Source: Dimorphilus gyrociliatus (taxonomy: Eukaryota > Animalia > Annelida). Taken from it: 64,000 nucleotides of DNA. The stretch covers positions 5,410,408 to 5,474,407 of the forward strand of contig CAJFCJ010000006.1 of NCBI GenBank assembly GCA_904063045.1, in the 5' to 3' direction. Positions 9,879 to 23,080 of this stretch are shown piece after piece; position 1 is the stretch's first letter; each line of letters begins with the position of its first letter. The notes below the pieces were generated by a model that was not told the origin of the DNA, searched no databases, and saw only the letters and a list, made by a program, of their open reading frames with translations. A program made the translations under genes and the position numbers.

Positions 9879-11689
9879 CTTCAGACGAATTTTTGTTTAG
9901 AATACGAATCGGACCTTATATGAATAAGTTGAAAGCGGATCCACTACGGGGGGACTGTCTATCTGATATAACATACTGATGTACTAGATTTAACGTAAAC
10001 TAAATAAATTTTAAAGTGTTGCATATTAATTATTAATAATAAATTATTTACCTAACTTAATTAAGAGTTTGCATACTAATTAAATAAATTGATAGATTTA
10101 ACGAATAACAATCAAAATTTTAAGAAACCGTAATAATTAAGCCTATTAAAATTTTTGTCTACCATGCGGAGGCGTAGTATCACTAACAATAGTATAATCA
10201 ATAACCAATAAGTATTTTTCAAGCGTCGCCGGCTAGAAATGATTAGATAACAGAGATTGTTAACTTTTATTCGTTTTCGTCCTAATGATTTTTTTCAGCT
10301 GATAAAAACAAATATTAACCATAAATATCAAAGTGACTTTGATTTATATTTTTTAATTAAAGAGAATATAAAAAATAAAGAAAAAAATTGGAAAAACATT
10401 CGCCTACGCATTTCAATTATCTTTTAAATAGAAAACTTCTTTTAATTTATTTGTTACCAGTTTATTAATTTAATTTTTTTTTTGTATTATCATTACAGCG
10501 ATAGGTATTAAGTATTATAATAATTTATTATATAATATACTGTATATAGAGGGAGACTAGGCTTATATACTATTAAGATAAATAATATATATATCGTATG
10601 TAAAATCTGCTTTAGTAAGCAAAAATAAAATATTTTGAATATTTCGATTAATTATTTATGTTTATAAGTAATATTATTGAAATAGATAATATAAACATAT
10701 ATATTTCTTTTAATAAACTTAATTATCACCTAGAATTCATTTCGTAATAGAATATTTTATATTCTGTTCCTTTTTTAAAAATGTTCTATATTCTATATTC
10801 TTTCGTTCCATTTTCTAAACTGTACTTTTCTTTCTCTTTTTATATCCTTGTTATAAATTATACTATTATTTGCTCTAAATCTAAAATAAAAAAGACAAGT
10901 CTAATTAGTTTAACTATCTTATCTTATAGATGAAATATTTAGAATTATTTTGCTTGTGTCGTAATAATCCTATAATCTCTTCTTTCTGTTGATTATAAAT
11001 TAAAAAGATCTTTGATTGATAACGAACAATTTGTTAGAAAAATTGTGATTTCTTTCATATACTTCTTATCTATATTGATGTGTACATATATATCCATTTA
11101 TTTAATTTGATAGTCTATTTACCTTTATATTTATTCTGTATGTATATATCTAATAATCATAGATTACATCGATTTACTATTAATTAATTATCATATGTAT
11201 TTATATATGTTTGAATACTTTTAATTTAATAAATAAATACTTTAAGCGTTAATTAAATAGAGAAAAAATATACACGTTACTCTACTTAGAAATATATAGA
11301 TATTTTGTTTTAGAATATGATTTAAAACATTATTAAATATCATTTGTTGAATAAAATAACAGCTTGTGCTTCTTCTTTAATAACTTTATTCAAAATTGTT
11401 CTTTATTCGTCTCTGAAACATTTGCGTGATTTAGAACTACCACAGCGGAAGTTGTTGTCTGCTAAAGTCCAAATTTTTACAGTTTTCTCACCAGTATTAA
11501 GTGTGTATTTATGTGTATTCTTTGCACATAATAGAAAGAAATCATCACTTTTTTCTTCATGAACTTCATCCTGAGGAAATGTAAAATATTCAAAGGTAGT
11601 ATTTAGCAGATTTCTGGACAAAAACACACTAGAAACTTATACTGACACGTGCAAAAACCTGGCAATGCAAGTAGTGCAAATCAACTAAT

Positions 11690-13037
11690 ATGTTTTTGAA
11701 TATTGAAAAATGGAGTAAACTTACCAAACTAGTCGGATTATTAATAATACTATTCGTCTTTAATGAATTCATTATCTACTATATTTTCTTGTTGCAATGT
11801 CAATGGCCTCTTTTACAACAGTCAAAGTCAGCCGAAGACGTGAAAGTGATGTTTCTAGCTGATACCCATATTTTAGGTAATAGAGAAGGACATTGGTTTG
11901 ATAAACTTCGAAGAGAATGGCAGATGGAAAGATCATTTCAAACAGCAATGGCTATACATAGTCCAGAAGTTGTTTTCATACTAGGAGATTTATTCGACGA
12001 AGGAAAATGGAGCAATGACGTGGAGTTCAAAACCTACGTTAATCGCTTTAATAAAATGTTTCGTCATTCATCTAGTACAAAATTATATACTACAGTTGGA
12101 AATCATGATATAGGCTTTCATTACATGGTCAATCCGCACAATAGAAAGAGATTTGAGAGTGCATTCGATGCTCCATCAATGCGAATGATTCGATTGAAAA
12201 AGACTATTTTTGTCTTAGCAAATAGTATGGCTTTCGAGGGAGATGGCTGTGATATGTGTGCTGAATCGGAAAAACTCTTGAATGAAATAGGAAGAAAGCT
12301 TGATTGTGCTCAAGTTAGTAGTCAGATAATATCTTCCCTTAAAATAAACGACAATATTTAATTATTCTTCTTATTATTTGCAAATACAGAACGGAAACAA
12401 ATATTTAGATTGCCATGACATAACAGAATCCTTTCAGTATTCAAGACCTATCTTATTGCAGGTACAGAAGAATATTTTATATATATTTACATTATTCCAT
12501 CTAATCTTTCTCTTCTTTGTACAGCACTTTCCCATGTTTAGAAAATCAGATTGGAATTGTAGTGGAGTAGACGCCGCCCCTGTAGAAGAGAGGCATAAAT
12601 CATTTAGGCCGAAGTATGACTGTTTGTCAAAAGAGGCTTCTAACCAACTATTTAATATTTTAAAACCTCGTCTTGTTGTAAGTGGTCATACACATCATGG
12701 CTGCTTAACTTATCATTTAGATGGAACACCTGAATATACAGTAGCTTCATTTAATTGGAGAAATAAAGCAAACAGTCCTTCGTTTCTATTGGTAAGTTAA
12801 AGAATCAATACGTTTTACACAGTTTTATATTTAATTTATCTGCTGTCATTATTATTATTTTCTTATATACTTTAGGCAAGAATTAATCAAAAGGACTTTG
12901 CTATTTCAAAATGTCAAATACCTTCTGAAATTCTAGTTATATGGATTTATTCAGTCTCAGCAGTTATATTAAGTTGTTGGATACTTTGGCCATTAATTTA
13001 TTATATAATCTATAGAAGAAGACGAAAATTCTTGTAA
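11690..13037 (+). CDS. MPPE1: Metallophosphoesterase 1 (PGAP5/Cdc1-like GPI-remodelling enzyme), 4 exons
   Basis: N-terminal TM (FNEFIIYYIFLLQCQWP) and motifs ADTH, ILGDLFDEG, VGNHDIGFH, LLQHFP, SGHTH, plus a C-terminal TM ending RRRRKFL*. The last exon is 12876-13037. Confidence 0.93.
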
Positions 13038-13451
13038 GAACGGAGAATAAAGAAACATAATTAATAGTAATCAAAAAAGAAAGAGGTTGAGAAATAGTTA
13101 TGGATAATTTTTTTGCGCTGTTTGTATCTTCTAGAAATAATTTTCTTAATCTTTTATACATTCCTTTGCTGTTTCTTTTTTGTTTATTCTACACATAAGA
13201 CAATTTTTTACTGCGAACTATGACTTTTAATGTCGTTTTGCAGAAATTGAGAAACTATTATCTAGAGAGTAACAAAACATCTGTAATATTTCTTACAATG
13301 TTTATATATTGGAAAAAAAATAAATAACGTGGCTATATACATAGATATAGTATATAATTTATATATATAAAGTATATATATATACGTATATATATATTAA
13401 GTTTTTATAATATACAACATGTTGTTCAAATTATTTGTTTAATCATACTAT

Positions 13452-15611: not shown

Positions 15612-16222
15612 TCAAGCGGTATTTAATTTAATATTACAGATATTTAACGATGTTAATTCCATATCAGTACTTTCAATAGTTAAATAACGACCAGTTCGTG
15701 TTGTTCCACAATTTACTGTTATTTCGTTAGTATATGGCGGTAATCTTGGTGAGGCGCAAATAGGATTATATTTAAAACCTTTACGATATTCTAGATTTTC
15801 GAGTTCGTCACCAATTCTTACTCTCAAGTGAGGAATATTTCTGCCTACATTCAGTGAAAAAAGGAAAACTATCAGGTCGTTTCAATAATTATTAATGTTA
15901 AATAATTACTCACCTAAAATGGTCAAACTGGAAATTGTAACATTTGTATTGTAATCGACGGTCAACCATGGATAAGCTTCAAAACCAGTTTCAGCGCACG
16001 TATCACCTGAACCATCTATAGCTAAATTAGCTGTAAAGGTATTTTTCGTACTGCTCTGAAAAGTATCTATCGCTAATGAAGCTGTTCAAATAAATTGTTG
16101 AATTAATATTTCTAAACAAACACTTTCTAAGAGTTTTAATATTAAAATATATTAGATTATTAATGAAACAAACCTGCGATTAGAACAGTCAAAATCAGGC
16201 AAAATAATCCACCGTTATACAT
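15612..16222 (-). CDS. Secreted F-type lectin (fucolectin / F5/8C-like) single-domain protein, 3 exons
   Basis: Signal peptide MYNGGLFCLILTVLIA. Fucolectin-fold motifs QSST...ANLAIDG...TCAET...PWLTVD, LRVRIGD, NPIC, ITVNC, GRYLTI, LNICNI. Confidence 0.7.
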
Positions 16223-16582
16223 ATTTAATGAAACGTCTGTTCAAGACTAGGAAAATGTCTTTCGATTTATATGATAAAATCAATTTTTCGCCATGACAAT
16301 GAGTTTGACGTCAAAAGCGTCAATAACACCATCTACTTTCATTCTTTTCAAACTTTTGTTTTTTTTATATAAAAGATAGACTTTAAAGAAAAAGTTTAAG
16401 TTAATCGACTAATATATTTACTTCTTCATCAACATAAAAAACACCTTCACCGTTACTCTATTCTTCATTTCATTTAAAGTGGAATTTTTGATTGAAACTA
16501 AATTCATTTAACAATTCAAATGCATATATTGATTAAAGATTAAGATTGTTAATCGCCTTTTTTTAATGCATAATTGATAAGA

Positions 16583-17981
16583 CTATTTTCTAAAAGCTTC
16601 TGTAAATCTTCTGGTATTCGATCCCCTTGGAAAAGGCTCTAAGGAAGATACGGCGTCTATCCAATTTTCAAAATTTTTCCCATCTTTATACCAGTTAACT
16701 AATTAAAATTCAAAATGAATAGATTAATAATATGTACAGTAATTATAATTGTTATTACTTGTTTCTTCTATACCATCTTCCCATTGAACTTCTTCCTTCC
16801 ATCCTAATTCTTTAAGTTTACTCGAATCCATTGGATATCTTGGATCGTCGTAAGGCCTGTCTTCTGTATAGTTAATAAACTTATTCGCTTCCTCTCCCTC
16901 AAGTCCTTTAAGCTGTTATACACGAATAAAAAAACGTTTTCTATTATGTTTACACTGAATATAAAGAAATTTCATAACGAACTTTTTTGATGAGTAATCT
17001 TGCTAATTCGATTATAGATATGCTAAAGTCGCTGCCAATGTTATACACTTCTCCAGGTTCGCCAGAATGAAGTATAAGATCAAAAGCATTGCATAGATCT
17101 TGAGCATGAATAAAGTTCCTAATTGCTTCTCCCTTACCATATATACAACACTGTCTATCTCTTTCTAAGAGGGATATAAACTTAGGGATGACTTTTTCTG
17201 GATATTGTCTTGGACCGTAGACGTTGTGGGATCTAGTTATTATTACAGGAAATCTAAATGATTCCCAGTATGAGTAGACCATAAATTCAGCAGCAGCTTT
17301 ACTAGCAGCGTATGGATTTGTTGGCTGCAATCTTGATTTCTCGTGCAAAGCAGTTTTAGAAGATCCACCGTAAACTTCATCGGTACTCACGTGGATGAAA
17401 AGTTTCACATTAGCCTCAAATGCAGCATTGACAAGCACGTGACTGCCGTACACATTTGTCATTGTAAAATCAATAGAAGACCAAAAAGAATAATCTATAA
17501 AATAGTTTACATTTCAGAATCTTCGGTAAAATAGAATGGAATCGATCTTTTCGGTCAATGAACTAAAATTAACTTACCAACATGAGATTGTGCTGCAAAA
17601 TGTATTATGGTATCAATCTTTTCTTCTTTAAGAATATATCTAGTGAAGCTTTCTTCACAAATGTCCCCGTGAATGAATTTATAATTTTCTTCATCTTCTA
17701 TATCTTTAAGATTCTTTAGACTAGCACAATAATCTAACTAGATTAATAAAGACGTATATTATAAATAATATTCTAATTATTTATTTTATAATCGTATACT
17801 TTATCCAAGTTAATTATCCGATAATTCTTGTATTTATTAACTAATTGAAGAACAACATGAGAGCCACTAAATAAAATATATTTAGTTCATTTAAAATGTA
17901 TCATATTTAATTTAAATATGTATTAACTAACATGAAGCCGGCTCCGCCCGTTATCAAGATGTTTTTATCAAATTTAGGCAT
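16583..17981 (-). CDS. TGDS: dTDP-D-glucose 4,6-dehydratase
   Basis: [16 protein letters not shown] (Rossmann), [30 protein letters not shown] (YxxxK), [34 protein letters not shown]-like motif. Confidence 0.93.
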
Positions 17982-18340
17982 GAAATTACAAAAAAAAGAA
18001 ACACCCAGCAAAATATCGTCTGCTAATCGAAAACGGAAGTTAGGCTTACGTCAATAAGTTCAACAAGAAATTGTCTATTTAAACAATGATAATTCTAAAT
18101 AAAATTAAACTTTTCTTAGGAAAATAGAACGAGAATTAAATACATAAAAAATATTTTAAATTAAATCATCTAGCTAAATATTGATTTAACCTTCTTTTTT
18201 TTTTAAATTAAATGCTGTATTACTCTCTCTTTTCTCTTAAAACATTCACGTATAATTAGTATTATTTATAGAATATAATAAAATGTTCACAAACAAAGAG
18301 ATAGAACTTGAAAAAAGAGAAATAGGGGAAATATACTCTT

Positions 18341-19678
18341 CTATGGATTTATCACGTTAAGAATACGTAATCCAAAAAATAAAGATATTATGAGCAAAGT
18401 TAGATTTGGGAATGAATTTGAAGCATTTCCAAGAAAATTAAAAGGCATCGCGGTTGGTCCTACTTGAACTGGTCCATTAGACATATTTCTAACTCTTAAG
18501 TAGGCTGATGTAACATCTTCGCAATTACGTAAAGTTGTTAGAGCTGGAGGAGTAACAACTTCCGTAAATTGTGCTGCAGCCCTCGACACAAGAATTTTAG
18601 AAGTCGTATAGCTATCCTCGAACTGTTTGATAATAGCAGTATTGTTCGCTCTTGGAACGCAAGGAATACCAGGACCCATCCAATAATAAAAATAATTTGG
18701 GGGATCAGTAACAGGCCACAAGTACATTCCATTGTAATAAGTTCCACCTGAATAGGAATTGCCAATTCTCTCTTCAGTTTTCTTTTTATTTAGAGCGGGC
18801 AATAATCCTAAAAGTAATCCCAAAAGGAGTCCAAGTAAAGCCAAACCTAACAAAATTCCTGTAATAGCAGCACACATTCTTTTGCATCCACTTCCAGCAA
18901 CACCGTATTTTCCATGGCTTGCTGCATTCTGTATTAAAGTATAAAGTAAACATAAGTTTATTCATTTCATATGTATTACACAATCATTCAAAATTTAATT
19001 AACCTTTCCAGCATATCTTGAACCTGCATTGCAACAGGTTGGTCCAGAATCGTAATTAGTTCCATTTCTGTAGTAATTTCCATCTTTAGGTGCGTTTCCT
19101 CCGAAGCAACCCGATCCTCTATTCTGAGGAGCCTCTCTAGCATAAGTATACTTATCATTTGGACCATTACTGTAGTGACGAGGAGTGTAGTTATCGTGTG
19201 GGGGTCTATTTCCGCCATGTTCGTAGACATGCTTTTCAATTGGTCTAGGACTTCTTCCATTAGGATTTCCATTATCGTAGACATGTCTCTCTACAGGTCT
19301 AGAACTTCTCCCGTTAGGACTTCCATTTTCGTAAATGTGTTTTTCAACTGGTCTTGGATTCCTGCCATTAGGACTTCCATTTTCATAAATATGTCTCTCT
19401 ACAGGTCTGTTCGGTGGATCATCTACTACGTAGCGCTTTTCTGGTGTAGATGGCCTGCTTCTTCTCTGTGGACTATAACTTCTAGACCTTGGTCGGCCAT
19501 CTTTGTAGATGTGCTCTTCAATAACCTGTGGTCTCTGAGGAGATTCATCCCTATGAACAATAGTCTTTGTAGGTGGTCGCGACTCAAGAACAACAACTTT
19601 AGGTTTTTGCTCTGGTTGAACAACCGGCCATCTTCTGTATTGATTTGGCCAGCCGTTAGCTCCTGATGAGATCGGCAT
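18341..19678 (-). CDS. Orphan membrane protein A (~420 aa): Arg/Pro/His-rich N-terminus, Cys cluster, TM, 2-Cys ectodomain, C-terminal hydrophobic GPI-like signal
   Basis: Exon 1 19678-19004 and exon 2 18928-18341 join in phase 0. TM AITGILLGLALLGLLLGLLLGLL. C-terminus GNASNSFPNLTLLIISLFFGLRILNVINP*. No N-terminal signal peptide. Confidence 0.75.
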
Positions 19679-19955
19679 GATAGAATGAAATTCAAGGTTC
19701 AATTGTGGCCTGTTGGGAAATTGAACCTCAACAAAATATTTTCTCTAACCTCATAAATATTTGCCTAAAACCGTGTCGTTGTTTGGACAAATATAGATTT
19801 CAGAATGACGTCGGACTCATTTCTTAATCTCAATATTTTCAAACAACGTCAGGTTCGTTTATGTACCCATAAATCGTTTTTGAGTACATAATTTTAGAAA
19901 GTGGTTGTTGATTGAGAAAAAATTGGTCAGTCCGCAGTTCGACACAAGACCAGCG

Positions 19956-21872
19956 ATGCGACATATCAAAGATCCTTTAACAGGTAGATGTGTAATCTGC
20001 GATAAAGGAGGAGTTCATCAGACTTCATCACCAGATGCAAAATGGAATCAGGTTTATAGAAAGATAATGTTTTATTATATAACTATTCTGTGAATTTCAT
20101 TCTTTTTCAGGCAAGAAAAGTAATCTATGTAAATGGAATGAGACCGAACACAGGTCAATCAAGGGCTGCATCTCCAACTGTTCGCCACATTCATGAAGCT
20201 GCTCCTCAGCCTCGTGATGTGACAATAGTTCACCATGATTCTCCAAGAAGACCCGAGGTCACTCACATTCATAGAAGTCCCTCGCCGAGGTCCAGAACAA
20301 TCATTCATCGAGCTCCGGACGAAATGAGCGATGTAAGTGCTAGGCAAGTGAAACCGAGGATAATAAAGGAAACTCACATTCACGAGAAATCGAGAGCTGC
20401 CTCTCCTCCTCCGAGGTAAATCTAAATTCATTTAATTTATTGATATACATTTTCGGGAGTATGTATTATATAGATACACTCGCACCATACGGCATAGAGA
20501 CGTCTCTCCAGAACCAGGATGCTGTGGTAAATCAAAACCAAAGAACAGAACTATTTATCATAAGAATGGACAGAATGTTGAGCACATTCATAGGAATGGA
20601 TCGTATGATTCCAAAACAACCCACATCCATGAAGTGATTATCAACAAATGCACACATTTCACTTAAATAATTTTTTCAATAACTTAAAGGGAGAAAGAGG
20701 CACATCAAAATCCTATTACAATAGGGGAGGATCACCCGATAGTAAATGCGGTAAAAGACAGTGCTGTGCCGTCTTATTGACACTGCTATTCCTCCTTCTT
20801 CTGGCTGGTTTGATACTCGGCCTCTATTTCGGTATTAAAGGTAAGAGATATGTATATGTTTCTTTTTATCAAGTCCAATGAACAGAGGGCTCTGACGGTT
20901 GTCGCTTTTTTTTTTCCAAAATTTCTCCTTTATTTGTCTGGGATTAATTCATAAAACAAACTTTAAAAGAATTATAATAATCATAAACCAAGCATTTATC
21001 CCTGATAACTTTTATGAATTAATTCGGATGAGTGGGATTATTGACTTTTATAAAATTATCTAGAAAAGGCGCATCTCACAGCCATCTGTTTTATATGGAG
21101 TACGAGGTAAAATATTAATGTAGAGTTATATCAAATATTTTACTTCATTTATTAAGAATATGAAAGTAAAATTCATTCAAGTTTGCGCTTTCGAGACTCT
21201 CTCGTCTAGATAATTTTTATAGAAATCAATTCCCAACAGCCGCAAAAGACAAAGAAGAACGTAATGATCCTGCCAACCGTTATCCAGGAGGGTATTACGT
21301 TGACGGTGTCTACGTGTACCCAGTTACCCGGAGACCCAGCCGTCCATACTTTGTTCTTGGTAAAGACCAGCCTTGCAACCCTTTTAACAATGGAACGGAT
21401 GCGACAACAGCTGTTCCTAATTGCGCTGAAACAACAACAAGGGTTGTCCTGGCCAATTTTACTTTAGAACCTTTACCGAGCTTTCGCCCGGTATATCTGA
21501 ATTCTGGCCATAACATCTCTCCTTTATCAGCCATGTTATATCTCAGTGTTGTATTATTTGTTCAATTTACAAAAATGACTTCCTTCTTTAGCTGCTTTGG
21601 ACAAAAAGGAGAGGGACAATACCGTAAGTAATCTACTGGAGAACAACAATCAGAATATGGTAATTTATGGGGCAGACCAACCATGCAATAGAGTTCCACA
21701 AAATAACGGGCTACCTCTTTGCTCCGAAATTACTACAAGAATTGGACCTCCCCCAGGAGGATTCATCCCACCTACTAATCAATCAATACCTTTCAGTCGA
21801 TCTTCTTCTCTATCTCCTTTCAGACTTCTAGTATGTCTCTTAATAACAAGTCTTGTACTACTTATGCAATAA
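19956..21872 (+). CDS. Orphan membrane protein B, paralogue of A, with two alternative last exons
   Basis: Exons 19956-20051, 20111-20415, 20474-20633 and 20690-20840 (TM AVLLTLLFLLLLAGLILGLYFGI, ends phase 1). These are followed by either 21240-21631 or 21592-21872, both phase-1 in-frame acceptors. The ectodomain is similar to that of gene A. Confidence 0.75.
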
Positions 21873-22095: not shown

Positions 22096-23080
22096 TCAAG
22101 CCTTAACAGCCAGACCTTTAAGCGTACCAATGCACTGTTTGATGCTATCTTTCTCCTGTGTTTTTATAAATATTATTAAAAAATGATTTATACAGCAAAT
22201 TAAATAAAAAATATACCTGTTGGGGGGTGATGCTTTTAACTACATTATTAACGATCCAAGAAACCATGTGGTCTTGTTCAAAGCGCCTTTGAGCGTTTTG
22301 CTTCTCTATTTGGTAGTCCAATCGCTTCTTAACTTTTTGTTGAACTTCGTGTAATCGTTGCCTATAAATTGCTTCTAATTGCAGTTGGACATTTTCCTTC
22401 TTGGCTTCGAATAACATTTTCTGTGCATCTTGCTGCCAAATTGCCTTCTCGGCTTCAGCAATAACTTCTTTTGCTTCTGTTTTTGCTTGTGCAATTGGAT
22501 CAGTCCTAAACAATTAAAAATCAAAAATAAGAATTTTACAATTAATTAACTTTATAAGGTATACCAATTTGCTTTTTCGTAATCAGTCATATATTTCTCA
22601 GCTGCTGGTTTGTACAAAGGTCCAACTTTCTTGATTAAATATGCCATAGCAAGCCAGAAAGAAAGAAATTCAACGTATCCGTGATCCATAACCCAGTACT
22701 CTTTAGAAAGGAGGAAGGTTAAGGCTCCAACACCGAAAACATAGGGTCCGGTTACACCAGTTTTCTCATAAAAGGCTTGAAACCAGCTATCGGGGATGAA
22801 TCCAAGTCGGACGGGGGGGTGACGTTCAGGTTGAACTGGGTCGGGAAAATTAACACGATCTCTTTCTGGGCTGTTGTAAAGAGCATTAGCTTTTTCCCAG
22901 TTTTCAAAATGTTTCTTCCATGGCACAGCCTTAAAAGAAACTGGTCGAACTGATTGCAAACTCCATTCGGAATTGCTAAGTAACAAACGAGTCGATCGTG
23001 CTGAAATGAATAATATTATTATTTCAAATTATAACTGAGAATAATGTTTCACCTGCTGAAGAGCTTAAACGGGAAAACAT
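22096..23080 (-). CDS. ATP5PB: Mitochondrial ATP synthase peripheral stalk subunit b
   Basis: [94 protein letters not shown]. The N-terminus resembles a mitochondrial presequence. Confidence 0.95.

What the first reader, a model, noticed from the sequence alone, without database searches (positions are those of the whole stretch)
18341..21872. Head-to-head paralogue pair with tetherin-like double-anchor topology
Seen in sequence: two divergently transcribed genes have ATGs only 278 bp apart (19678 minus, 19956 plus) and share one layout. Each has no signal peptide, a long Arg/Pro/His/Ser-rich N-terminus, Cys clusters before a single TM (GSGCKRMCAA; SKCGKRQCCAV), a short ectodomain with two Cys and N-glycan sequons, and a C-terminal hydrophobic stretch. 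The ectodomains align: KKTEERIGNSYSGGTYYNGMYLWPVT...GIPCVP..NNT...NCEDVT versus KDKEERNDPANRYPGGYYVDGVYVYPVT...DQPCNP.NNGT...NCAETT. Established: an N-terminal TM plus C-terminal GPI is a rare topology typified by BST-2/tetherin, which links membranes or bridges raft and non-raft domains. Inference: an undescribed family of membrane-tethering or membrane-shaping proteins (microvilli, cilia, vesicles or virions) co-expressed from one bidirectional promoter. There is no sequence homology to BST-2; the analogy is topological only.
Basis: partly seen in the sequence, partly recalled or inferred. Interest (0 to 1): 0.8.

Follow-up and report, generated by a model that had tools for sequence, protein, structure and literature searches.

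The report
Unnamed annelid double-anchor membrane protein pair
Two neighbouring, back-to-back genes of the small marine worm Dimorphilus belong to an old, unnamed annelid family of surface glycoproteins. They have one membrane-spanning helix and a tail that looks like a lipid-anchor signal, which is a rare layout, but nothing shows that they tether membranes as tetherin does.

Summary
Two divergent genes have ATGs at 19678 (minus) and 19956 (plus). They encode paralogous proteins with no signal peptide, a long Arg/Pro/Ser/His-rich N-terminus, cysteines next to the membrane, one strong TM, a small two-Cys glycosylated ectodomain and a hydrophobic C-tail. The ectodomains match at BLASTP E=4e-10.

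A profile search of 1.8 billion proteins found about 30 relatives. The plus gene is DgyrCDS5604 of Dimorphilus gyrociliatus. The named relatives are hypothetical proteins of Capitella and Paralvinella. There is no Pfam family, no PDB relative and no paper.

The family has three ectodomain types:
- Type A is plus exon 5.
- Type B is the minus gene.
- Type C is plus exon 6, a duplicated alternative last exon.

The A/B pair is also head-to-head in Capitella and in tandem in Paralvinella. The type C exon also lies downstream of Paralvinella's A gene.

Across the family the C-tail is short, poorly conserved and nearly terminal, which fits a GPI signal better than a second TM. This rests on heuristics only. 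The exon-5 tail is atypical.

Tetherin's coiled-coil rod is absent, so the tethering function is unsupported. The public annotation fuses the minus gene to the neighbouring dehydratase gene, probably wrongly.

The parts
19004..19678 (-). Minus gene (type B), exon 1. It encodes a 225-aa cytosolic, disordered N-terminal region that starts MPISSGANGWP.
   Evidence: The ORF and the splice donor AAG|GTTAAT are in the sequence. The N-terminal peptide and the EEHIY-x-[DN]G motif are shared with the Capitella and Paralvinella type B genes.
19215..19408 (-). A 54-nt tandem repeat of about 3.6 copies inside exon 1. It encodes the 18-aa unit RPVE[KR]H[IV]Y[ED]NG[SN]PNGRxx.
   Evidence: Found by Tandem Repeats Finder and the repeat finder.
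18929..19003 (-). Intron of the minus gene, 75 nt, with GT..AG ends.
   Evidence: Sequence context. Its size is typical of this genome, where the median intron is 66 bp (PMC7854359).
18341..18928 (-). Minus gene exon 2 (195 aa plus stop). It encodes the juxtamembrane Cys residues, the TM, the type B ectodomain and the C-terminal hydrophobic tail.
   Evidence: Translation is and hydropathy. It is homologous to the Capitella type B exon at E=3.5e-15. The type B clade has 100/98 support.
18791..18877 (-). TM helix of the minus gene (MCAAITGILLGLALLGLLLGLLLGLLPAL).
   Evidence: Kyte-Doolittle 15-residue (KD15) windows reach 2.87. The apolar run is 26 aa.
18428..18790 (-). Type B ectodomain. It contains the YSGGTYYNGMYLWPVT motif, Cys90 and Cys136 of exon 2, and sequons that include NNT and NMS.
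18344..18427 (-). C-terminal tail of the minus gene, which looks like a GPI signal. It has small residues (GNASNS), then the apolar run LTLLIISLFFGL, then 8 more residues.
19679..19955 (.). The 277-nt region between the two start codons, a putative shared promoter. It holds a perfect 10-bp inverted repeat (19695-19704 and 19719-19728). It also holds an imperfect 35-nt inverted repeat (19774-19851) around TGACGTCG.
   Evidence: Its function was not tested.
19956..20051 (+). Plus gene (type A, DgyrCDS5604), exon 1. It starts MRHIKDPLTG.
   Evidence: It matches P0001. The N-terminal peptide is shared with P0004 and P0019.
20111..20415 (+). Plus gene exon 2. It encodes part of the cytosolic Arg/Pro/Ser/His-rich region, with H-I-H motifs and the motif KVIYVNG.
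20474..20633 (+). Plus gene exon 3. It encodes more of the cytosolic region, including GCCG and further H-I-H motifs.
20690..20840 (+). Plus gene exon 4. It encodes the juxtamembrane Cys residues (SKCGKRQCC) and the TM at about 20759-20833 (LLLAGLILGLYFGIK).
   Evidence: KD15 reaches 3.09. The TM motif is conserved across the family.
21240..21631 (+). Plus gene exon 5, the annotated last exon. It encodes the type A ectodomain (YPGGYYVDGVYVYPVT, DQPCNPFNNGT, PNCAETTTR) and an atypical tail.
21592..21872 (+). Duplicated alternative last exon (type C). It has the same phase-1 acceptor and the same opening residues (AALDKKERD against AAKDKEERN). It ends in a textbook GPI-like tail (SSS, then LLVCLLITSLVLLM, then Q) and AATAAA overlaps its stop codon.
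   Evidence: Orthologous type C exons exist in Paralvinella (L003 13088-13411) and on a TARA scaffold. It groups with them in the tree at 84/86. Its use in mRNA was not tested.

Best explanation
**Shown**
- The two genes are real, anciently duplicated paralogues of an unnamed protein family. The minus gene is type B and the plus gene is type A. All named members of the family come from annelids.
- Each protein has a long, low-complexity N-terminal region with no signal peptide. This region carries conserved short motifs. These are an N-terminal peptide (MPISSGANGWP in B, M-x-H-I-[KR]-D-P-x-T-G in A) and repeats of H-[IV]-[YH]-[ED].
- Next comes a basic and cysteine cluster, then one strongly hydrophobic and well-conserved TM (..LLLAGLIxGLYFGIK).
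- Next comes an ectodomain core of about 70 aa with one cysteine pair and the motifs GGYYxNGxYxxPVT, PCNPYNNN[ST] and PNCxxxTT. A Thr-rich stretch follows in many members.
- Each protein ends in a short, poorly conserved hydrophobic tail.
- The A/B pair lies head-to-head in Capitella as well.
- The A gene has a duplicated second last exon (type C) that Paralvinella also has.

**Inferred**
- The TM acts as a type II signal anchor, with the N-terminus in the cytosol.
- The juxtamembrane cysteines are palmitoylated.
- The ectodomain is N-glycosylated and has an internal disulfide.
- The C-tail is a GPI-attachment signal. The mature protein is then held in the same membrane at both ends, with its small domain close to the surface.
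- The most likely role is a surface recognition or scaffold protein that links a small extracellular module, probably in ordered lipid domains, to cytosolic partners that bind the repeated tail motifs.
- Choice of the last exon in the A gene would change the ectodomain and the quality of the second anchor.
For: - **Gene models and paralogy.**
- **A real family.** The profile search found 32 proteins at E<=1e-3 and 14 at E<=1e-10 among 1.84 billion.
- **Transcript support elsewhere.** Two relatives lie on mRNA-like contigs as complete ORFs with the same architecture.
- **Conserved linkage.** Capitella has a type B gene at L002 7693-8760 (-) opposite the type A gene at 10001-11753 (+). Paralvinella has the A gene, the type C exon and a B-like gene in a row.
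- **Tree.** The B clade has 100/98 support and includes the minus gene and the Capitella B gene. The C group has 84/86 support.
- **TM against tail.** The TM apolar run has a median of 25 aa and a column conservation of 0.68. The C-tail apolar run has a median of 14 aa (range 8-27), a conservation of 0.40 and a median of 6.5 residues after it. In most complete members, candidate triplets of small residues lie 17-32 residues from the end.
- **Orientation.** No N-terminal hydrophobic window exists. The basic residues before the TM come without acidic ones. The sequons lie only on the C-terminal side.
Against: - No GPI or topology predictor was available. The GPI reading rests on my own heuristics.
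- The tail of the annotated plus-gene isoform (exon 5) has 22 residues after its apolar run and no candidate attachment site by my rule. Several relatives (P0003, P0008, P0013, P0024) also have 15-18 residues after their apolar run.
- No expression or splice-junction data could be obtained.
- The structure models have only moderate confidence (pLDDT 77 and 68) and match no known fold. The ectodomain therefore gives no functional clue.
- The taxonomic range is known from only three named annelids. The other members come from unlabelled metagenome or read assemblies.
- Palmitoylation, glycosylation and partner binding are pure inference.
Confidence: 0.5

Rival explanations
1. Hairpin protein. 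The C-terminal hydrophobic stretch is a second TM, so both ends face the cytosol. The glycosylated module is then an extracellular loop, and there is no lipid anchor.
For: Some tails are followed by 10-22 residues that include basic ones. Examples are Dimorphilus exon 5 (..FTKMTSFFSCFGQKGEGQYRK), P0013 (..TKQFSSKMRHF), P0003 (..GRRSAWI) and P0008. AlphaFold models the exon-5 tail as one 26-residue helix.
Against: The apolar run has a median of only 14 aa, against 25 for the first TM. It is poorly conserved. In most members it ends within a few residues of the C-terminus and is preceded by small residues. That is the usual pattern of GPI signals.
Confidence: 0.2
2. Tetherin-like tether. One anchor stays in the cell membrane and the other enters a budding vesicle, virion or neighbouring membrane domain, holding them together.
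For: The predicted layout of TM plus GPI is the one that tetherin uses. An artificial tetherin built from unrelated parts works, so configuration matters more than sequence (PMC3235769). The layout is conserved in the family.
Against: [quoted passage not shown] Here the ectodomain is modelled as short beta strands and loops with no helix outside the membrane-proximal segments. Its two conserved Cys are 15 to about 45 residues apart within one small module, which suggests an internal bond. The cytosolic tail of 230-240 aa is unlike tetherin's 21 aa. There are no functional data.
Confidence: 0.07
3. Pro-protein. The TM serves only as an uncleaved signal anchor. Cleavage at the conserved basic cluster just outside the membrane (ALNKKKTEER, AAKDKEER, RDEKRR, ARRR in relatives) then frees an ordinary GPI-anchored glycoprotein from a TM and cytosolic stub.
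For: A Lys/Arg cluster follows the TM on the extracellular side in nearly all members. A few of them fit R-x-[KR]-R.
Against: Most clusters are Lys-rich and mixed with acidic residues, so they do not match a convertase consensus. The well-conserved cytosolic motifs argue that the N-terminal part works together with the rest. There are no data.
Confidence: 0.08
4. Annotation reading. The minus gene is not a separate gene but the 5' part of a 693-aa fusion with the downstream dTDP-glucose-4,6-dehydratase-like gene, as in the public annotation.
For: The public gene call spans window 16583-19678 and gives 693 aa. Only one splice combination reproduces that length. It is exon 1, then exon 2 up to 18464, then dehydratase exon 3 onward.
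Against: That model drops the family's conserved tail and stop codon. It also drops the dehydratase's own ATG (17981) and its first two exons, which hold the GGAGF nucleotide-binding motif. The Capitella orthologue is a stand-alone 318-aa gene ending in the same kind of tail.
Confidence: 0.1

Closest known systems
BST-2 / tetherin (CD317)
   Same: The predicted topology is the same: N-terminus in the cytosol, one TM, a glycosylated ectodomain with cysteines, and a C-terminal GPI-type signal. This topology is described as extremely unusual (PMC3235769).
   Different: There is no sequence similarity. The ectodomain is a small beta-rich module rather than a coiled-coil rod of about 90 angstroms. 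The cytosolic region is 230-240 aa and not 21 aa. Dimer formation is unknown. The family is found in annelids and has no known link to interferon or viruses.
CtmPrP, the transmembrane isoform of prion protein
   Same: It is the only other protein the review names with both a TM and a GPI anchor.
   Different: In PrP this form is a minor alternative topology of a protein that is normally GPI-anchored only and has a cleaved signal peptide. Here the TM is the constitutive, conserved signal anchor. There is no sequence relation.
Palmitoylated transmembrane adaptor proteins (LAT, PAG/Cbp, NTAL); from my own knowledge, not tested
   Same: Both have one TM, cysteines at the cytosolic membrane boundary and a long disordered cytosolic region with repeated Tyr motifs. 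The motifs here include Y-x-N (YENG, YDNG, YVNG). Both are presumed to sit in ordered lipid domains.
   Different: Those adaptors have a tiny N-terminal ectodomain and a C-terminal cytosolic tail, which is the opposite orientation. In the plus gene and in Capitella, Tyr in the repeat is often replaced by His, which weakens a phosphotyrosine reading. There is no homology.
Uncharacterised proteins DgyrCDS5604 (Dimorphilus gyrociliatus), CAPTEDRAFT_228355 (Capitella teleta), and LSH36_366g01019 and LSH36_616g03034 (Paralvinella palmiformis)
   Same: These are true family members. The first is the plus gene itself.
   Different: None has a name, a domain assignment or a publication.

Membership tests
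BST-2/tetherin | Sequence or profile similarity to BST-2 | tested here: not met
   No Pfam family at all passed threshold for the window exons or for ten family members. The family profile found nothing in PDB sequences.
BST-2/tetherin | N-terminal cytosolic tail followed by a single type II TM | tested here: met
   By prediction only. There is no N-terminal hydrophobic segment. One apolar run of 24-28 aa follows the 230-240 aa N-terminal region of the two window genes, with basic residues before it and sequons after it.
BST-2/tetherin | C-terminal GPI attachment signal | tested here: inconclusive
   By heuristics only, the tail is short, terminal and poorly conserved, and is preceded by small residues in most members. 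The minus-gene tail is plausible, the exon-6 tail is textbook and the exon-5 tail is atypical. No dedicated predictor or experiment was available.
BST-2/tetherin | Extended parallel coiled-coil ectodomain acting as a spacer | tested here: not met
   AlphaFold models made with a 34-35 sequence alignment show four short strands and loops. Helices appear only next to the TM and in the tail. The requirement is stated in PMC3235769.
BST-2/tetherin | Disulfide-linked homodimer | not testable with these tools
   Two conserved Cys exist. Whether they pair within or between chains cannot be decided here.
Unnamed annelid family (DgyrCDS5604 / CAPTEDRAFT_228355 type) | Ectodomain core with G-x-[DG]-x-P-C-N-x-[YF]-N-N-x-[ST] and [PL]-x-C-x-x-x-T-T | tested here: met
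   Both window genes and exon 6 align to it. In the 35-row alignment, Gly43 and Cys48 are invariant, and Pro47, Asn53 and Cys64 are nearly invariant. The minus gene departs at some positions (PCVPRANNT, NCEDVTS).
Unnamed annelid family (DgyrCDS5604 / CAPTEDRAFT_228355 type) | Conserved TM preceded by a basic and Cys cluster | tested here: met
   Shown by alignment A2, where R169, L179, L184, L187, G190, Y192 and F193 are invariant.
Unnamed annelid family (DgyrCDS5604 / CAPTEDRAFT_228355 type) | Hydrophobic tail at the C-terminus | tested here: met
   All 28 complete C-termini examined have an apolar window with KD12 of at least 1.8 within the last 40 residues.
LAT/PAG-type transmembrane adaptors | Very short ectodomain, and a cytosolic tail that lies C-terminal to the TM | tested here: not met
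   The orientation is opposite and the ectodomain is about 100-150 aa.

The most novel reading that the evidence does not exclude
Annelids have a conserved family of surface glycoproteins that are truly anchored twice, by a TM and by GPI. This would be the third natural case of that topology, after tetherin and a prion-protein isoform, and the first outside vertebrates. The gene pair would share a promoter. In the A gene, the choice between two duplicated last exons would switch the ectodomain and the second anchor on or off.
Probability: 0.12. Interest if true: 0.8.

Novelty: new variant of a known kind. Interest (0 to 1): 0.5.

Why it matters
A protein held in the membrane by both a TM and a GPI anchor is a very rare design. 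The review I read names only tetherin and one prion-protein isoform. A whole family that keeps this predicted design across distant annelids would give an independent natural example. The family also has a conserved paired gene arrangement and a conserved alternative last exon that alters the second anchor. It would therefore be a tractable system for asking what double anchoring is for. If the tail proves to be an ordinary second TM, or is simply removed, the finding reduces to one more lineage-restricted membrane protein family of unknown function. Either way, the public annotation of the minus gene, a 693-aa fusion with a dehydratase, probably needs correcting.

Tried and rejected
- **Family scans.** Pfam and NCBIfam scans of every exon and of ten relatives gave only sub-threshold noise on the TM.
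- **Word-index searches.** With minus exon 2, with the full-length alignment and with P0001, these found nothing new. Leu-rich TM words flooded the candidate lists, and the length filter excluded the 420-aa product.
- **Other similarity searches.** The ESM Atlas feature search gave no usable hit in two tries. The PDB sequence profile gave none.
- **Fold searches.** For the core-only model, Foldseek and VIA-align found no match at all. The core model has only pLDDT 68, so I do not claim a new fold.
- **Type C exon in other loci.** None was found within 10 kb downstream of the Capitella A gene or of the second Paralvinella paralogue.
- **Promoter ideas.**
  - An RFX X-box did not match the consensus.
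  - The ACGTTGTTTG element is no more frequent in the window than chance predicts.
  - An 11-mer shared with the Capitella upstream region is within chance expectation.
- **Phosphotyrosine or Grb2-type reading of the Y-x-N motifs.** I kept this only as a weak idea. Three of the five motifs in the minus gene come from one tandem repeat, and Tyr is replaced by His in the plus gene and in Capitella.
- **Literature.** Searches for the locus tags, motif strings and a run accession found nothing.
Full report
**What is in the sequence**

The region holds two divergently oriented genes.

The minus gene starts at ATG 19678.
- Exon 1 (19004-19678) ends at a donor AAG|GTTAAT. A 75-nt intron ends in ..TTAATACAG at 18929.
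- Exon 2 (18341-18928) runs to a stop codon. The product is 225 + 195 = 420 aa.

The plus gene starts at ATG 19956.
- My exons are 19956-20051, 20111-20415, 20474-20633, 20690-20840 and 21240-21631.
- They give exactly the 367-aa database protein P0001, which is DgyrCDS5604 of Dimorphilus gyrociliatus (CAD5116749.1).
- That match also confirms the organism that earlier notes of this scan had named.

Window exons were searched one by one by reference, and the full-length sequences I used were database proteins. The one join I made was inside a script, to find which exon combination reproduces the length of the public gene call.

**The shared layout**

Both products have these features:
- There is no hydrophobic window in the N-terminal exons, so no signal peptide.
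- The N-terminal regions are rich in Arg, Pro and Ser, plus His in the plus gene and Asn, Gly and Tyr in the minus gene.
- Cysteines lie next to basic residues directly before the only strong hydrophobic segment, an apolar run of 25-26 aa.
- The ectodomain has two cysteines and three or four N-x-[ST] sequons.
- There is a hydrophobic stretch near the C-terminus.

The ectodomains are significantly alike. BLASTP gave E=4e-10, with 43% identity over 51 residues. tblastn within the window gave 3.6e-9 and 2.5e-7. The N-terminal regions share weaker, collinear similarity, for example IVHRDESPQRPQV..HIY against IVHHDSPRRPEVTHIH, and GCFGG against GCCGK. The minus gene carries a 54-nt tandem repeat of about 3.6 copies, which encodes RPVE[KR]H[IV]Y[ED]NG[SN]PNGR.

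**A real but unnamed family**

- Pfam and NCBIfam gave nothing.
- A profile of the three window ectodomains was scored against 1.84 billion representative proteins. It found 32 proteins at E<=1e-3 and 14 at E<=1e-10.
- The named relatives are hypothetical proteins of Capitella teleta (CAPTEDRAFT_228355, 550 aa) and Paralvinella palmiformis (two paralogues of 313 and 287 aa).
- The other members come from JGI metagenomes or metatranscriptomes, a TARA metagenome and Logan read assemblies.
- Two of these (L007, L008) are mRNA-like contigs. Each carries a complete ORF with an upstream in-frame stop and the full architecture.
- Ten relatives have no Pfam domain. The family profile finds nothing in PDB sequences. 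No paper mentions the locus tags or the motifs.

Full-length alignment shows a conserved TM (..LLLAGLIxGLYFGIK). It also shows an ectodomain core reading GGYYVNGVYVVPVT..P...YLIxGxDxPCNPYNNNT.....PNC..VTT.IV.ANWTTTT. A tail follows that is hydrophobic but not conserved in sequence.

**Three ectodomain types and old linkage**

The alignment of 35 ectodomains and a maximum-likelihood tree separate three types.
- **Type A** includes plus exon 5.
- **Type B** has a long insert between the two cysteines. Its clade has 100/98 support and holds the minus gene, the Capitella neighbour gene and several fragments.
- **Type C** lacks the GGYY hairpin motif. Its group has 84/86 support and holds plus exon 6, a Paralvinella exon and others.

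The arrangement in the other two annelids is as follows.
- In Capitella, a 318-aa type B gene (L002 7693-8760, minus) lies head-to-head with the type A gene (10001-11753, plus). Its N-terminus (MPTSSG..EEHIYENG) and its tail match the Dimorphilus minus gene.
- In Paralvinella, the A gene (L003 10001-11833) comes first and a type C exon (13088-13411, equal to P0025) follows. Then comes a B-like gene that starts MPISSGANGWP (15753-17824). All three are on the same strand.

The A/B duplication and their adjacency therefore predate the split of these annelids. The head-to-head orientation is shared by two of the three.

**The second last exon**

- Exon 6 (21592-21872) has an acceptor in the same phase as exon 5 and opens with the same residues (AALDKKERD against AAKDKEERN).
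- It aligns with exon 5 along its whole length (E=2e-6).
- Its stop codon overlaps an AATAAA.
- Its acceptor lies inside the 3' end of the exon-5 reading frame.
- I saw no AATAAA between the exon-5 stop and that signal. Both forms may therefore use one 3' end and differ only in acceptor choice. This is inference.
- An orthologous exon lies downstream of the Paralvinella A gene, and another lies behind a phase-1 acceptor on a TARA scaffold.
- None was found within 10 kb in Capitella.

**Is the tail a GPI signal?**

No dedicated predictor was available, so I compared the first TM with the tail across the family.

| Feature | First TM | C-tail |
|---|---|---|
| Apolar run, median | 25 aa | 14 aa |
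| Apolar run, range | 24-28 aa | 8-27 aa |
| Mean majority-residue fraction | 0.68 | 0.40 |
| Residues after the run | not applicable | median 6.5 |

Most complete members also have triplets of small residues 17-32 residues from the end. This is the usual picture of a GPI-attachment signal and is unlike a membrane-spanning helix.

Within the window the three tails differ.
- The exon-6 tail is textbook: ..SRSSSLSPFR, then LLVCLLITSLVLLM, then Q.
- The minus-gene tail is plausible: GNASNS, FPN, LTLLIISLFFGL, RILNVINP.
- The exon-5 tail is atypical, with 22 residues including GQKGEGQYRK after the apolar run.

A few relatives also have 15-18 residues after the apolar run. I therefore rate GPI anchoring as the best reading at about one half, and a second TM (hairpin) as the main rival.

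The first hydrophobic segment cannot be a cleaved signal peptide, because it begins about 230-240 residues into each protein.

**Structure**

- AlphaFold with the 35-row alignment gave pLDDT 77 for P0001 residues 236-367. The model has a short membrane-proximal helix, four short strands and a tail helix.
- A core-only model reached pLDDT 68.
The Atlas search gave TM-scores of 0.40 or less. VIA-align matched only the tail helix.
- For the core-only model, Foldseek and VIA-align found no match at all.

At this confidence I claim neither a new fold nor a known one. What the models do show is the absence of a long helical or coiled-coil ectodomain.

**Comparison with tetherin**

[quoted passage not shown] It calls this double-anchor topology extremely unusual, shared only with a prion-protein isoform. 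It lists both anchors and disulfide-linked dimers as required for function, with the coiled coil acting as a molecular ruler (PMC3235769).

The present family matches the predicted topology only. It has no sequence relation, no coiled coil, a cytosolic region ten times longer and unknown oligomeric state. It may therefore be built like tetherin at the level of anchors. It is not a member of that family, and the tethering mechanism has no support here.

**What it most likely does**

My best reading is a cell-surface recognition or scaffold protein, and this is inference. Its small glycosylated module would be held close to the membrane between a TM and a lipid anchor. Its long disordered cytosolic region would recruit partners through conserved short motifs:
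- the N-terminal peptides;
- a Tyr motif near the start of type A (KVIYVNG in Dimorphilus, KVVYVNMG in Paralvinella);
- the repeated H-[IV]-[YH]-[ED] units, of which EEHIY-x-[DN]G is shared by the Dimorphilus and Capitella B genes.

A phosphotyrosine reading of the Y-x-N motifs is possible but weak, because His replaces Tyr in many repeats.

**Annotation problem**

The public gene call for the minus gene spans window 16583-19678 and gives 693 aa. Only one combination reproduces that length. It is exon 1, then exon 2 up to 18464, then exon 3 onward of the downstream dTDP-glucose-4,6-dehydratase-like gene.

That model discards the family's tail and stop codon. It also discards the dehydratase's own ATG at 17981 and its first two exons, which carry the GGAGF nucleotide-binding motif. 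The Capitella orthologue stands alone. I take the fusion for an annotation chimera or a minor read-through form, but RNA reads are needed to settle it.

**Limits**

- No RNA evidence could be obtained.
- GPI attachment, palmitoylation, glycosylation and co-expression are all untested.
- The taxonomic range beyond three named annelids is unknown.

**Verdict**

The 'undescribed family with a conserved double-anchor-like layout' is supported. The tetherin-like function is not.

Noticed in passing
window 16583-19678 (-): The public annotation (GCA_904063045.1) merges the minus gene with the downstream dTDP-glucose-4,6-dehydratase-like gene into one 693-aa product. The only combination that fits skips the family tail and the dehydratase's first two exons, so it is probably a chimeric model.
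   Followed up: partly
window 21240-21631 and 21592-21872 (+); L003 13088-13411: The last exon is duplicated, and the second copy's acceptor lies inside the first copy's coding end. A matching type C exon lies 1.3 kb downstream of the Paralvinella orthologue. There it overlaps a call annotated as a separate 52-aa gene (L003 12696-13294).
   Followed up: partly
window 19695-19704 / 19719-19728 and 19774-19851: A perfect 10-bp inverted repeat (AGGTTCAATT and AATTGAACCT) lies 17-50 bp upstream of the minus ATG. A 35-nt imperfect inverted repeat centred on TGACGTCG lies in the middle of the 277-nt intergenic region. One 11-mer of the first repeat also occurs 133 bp upstream of the Capitella A gene (L002 9868), which is within chance expectation.
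   Followed up: partly
window 19215-19408 (-): A 54-nt coding tandem repeat (3.6 copies, 77% matches) has multiplied an 18-aa motif. A single copy of its core (EEHIYENG) is present in Capitella.
   Followed up: partly
window 22096-23080 (-) (L001 7141-8125): The next gene downstream of the plus gene is the mitochondrial ATP synthase subunit b (Pfam Mt_ATP-synt_B on the annotated 270-aa product).
   Followed up: no
L002 7693-8760 (-): The Capitella type B gene has an intron between the TM and the ectodomain. Dimorphilus lacks that intron in its B gene but keeps one at the same place in its A gene. This fits the intron loss reported for Dimorphilus.
   Followed up: no
L003 15753-17824 (+): The Paralvinella B-like gene keeps the N-terminal peptide MPISSGANGWP and GCFGG. 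Its ectodomain is very divergent, with the longest branch in the tree, and it lies in tandem rather than head-to-head.
   Followed up: no
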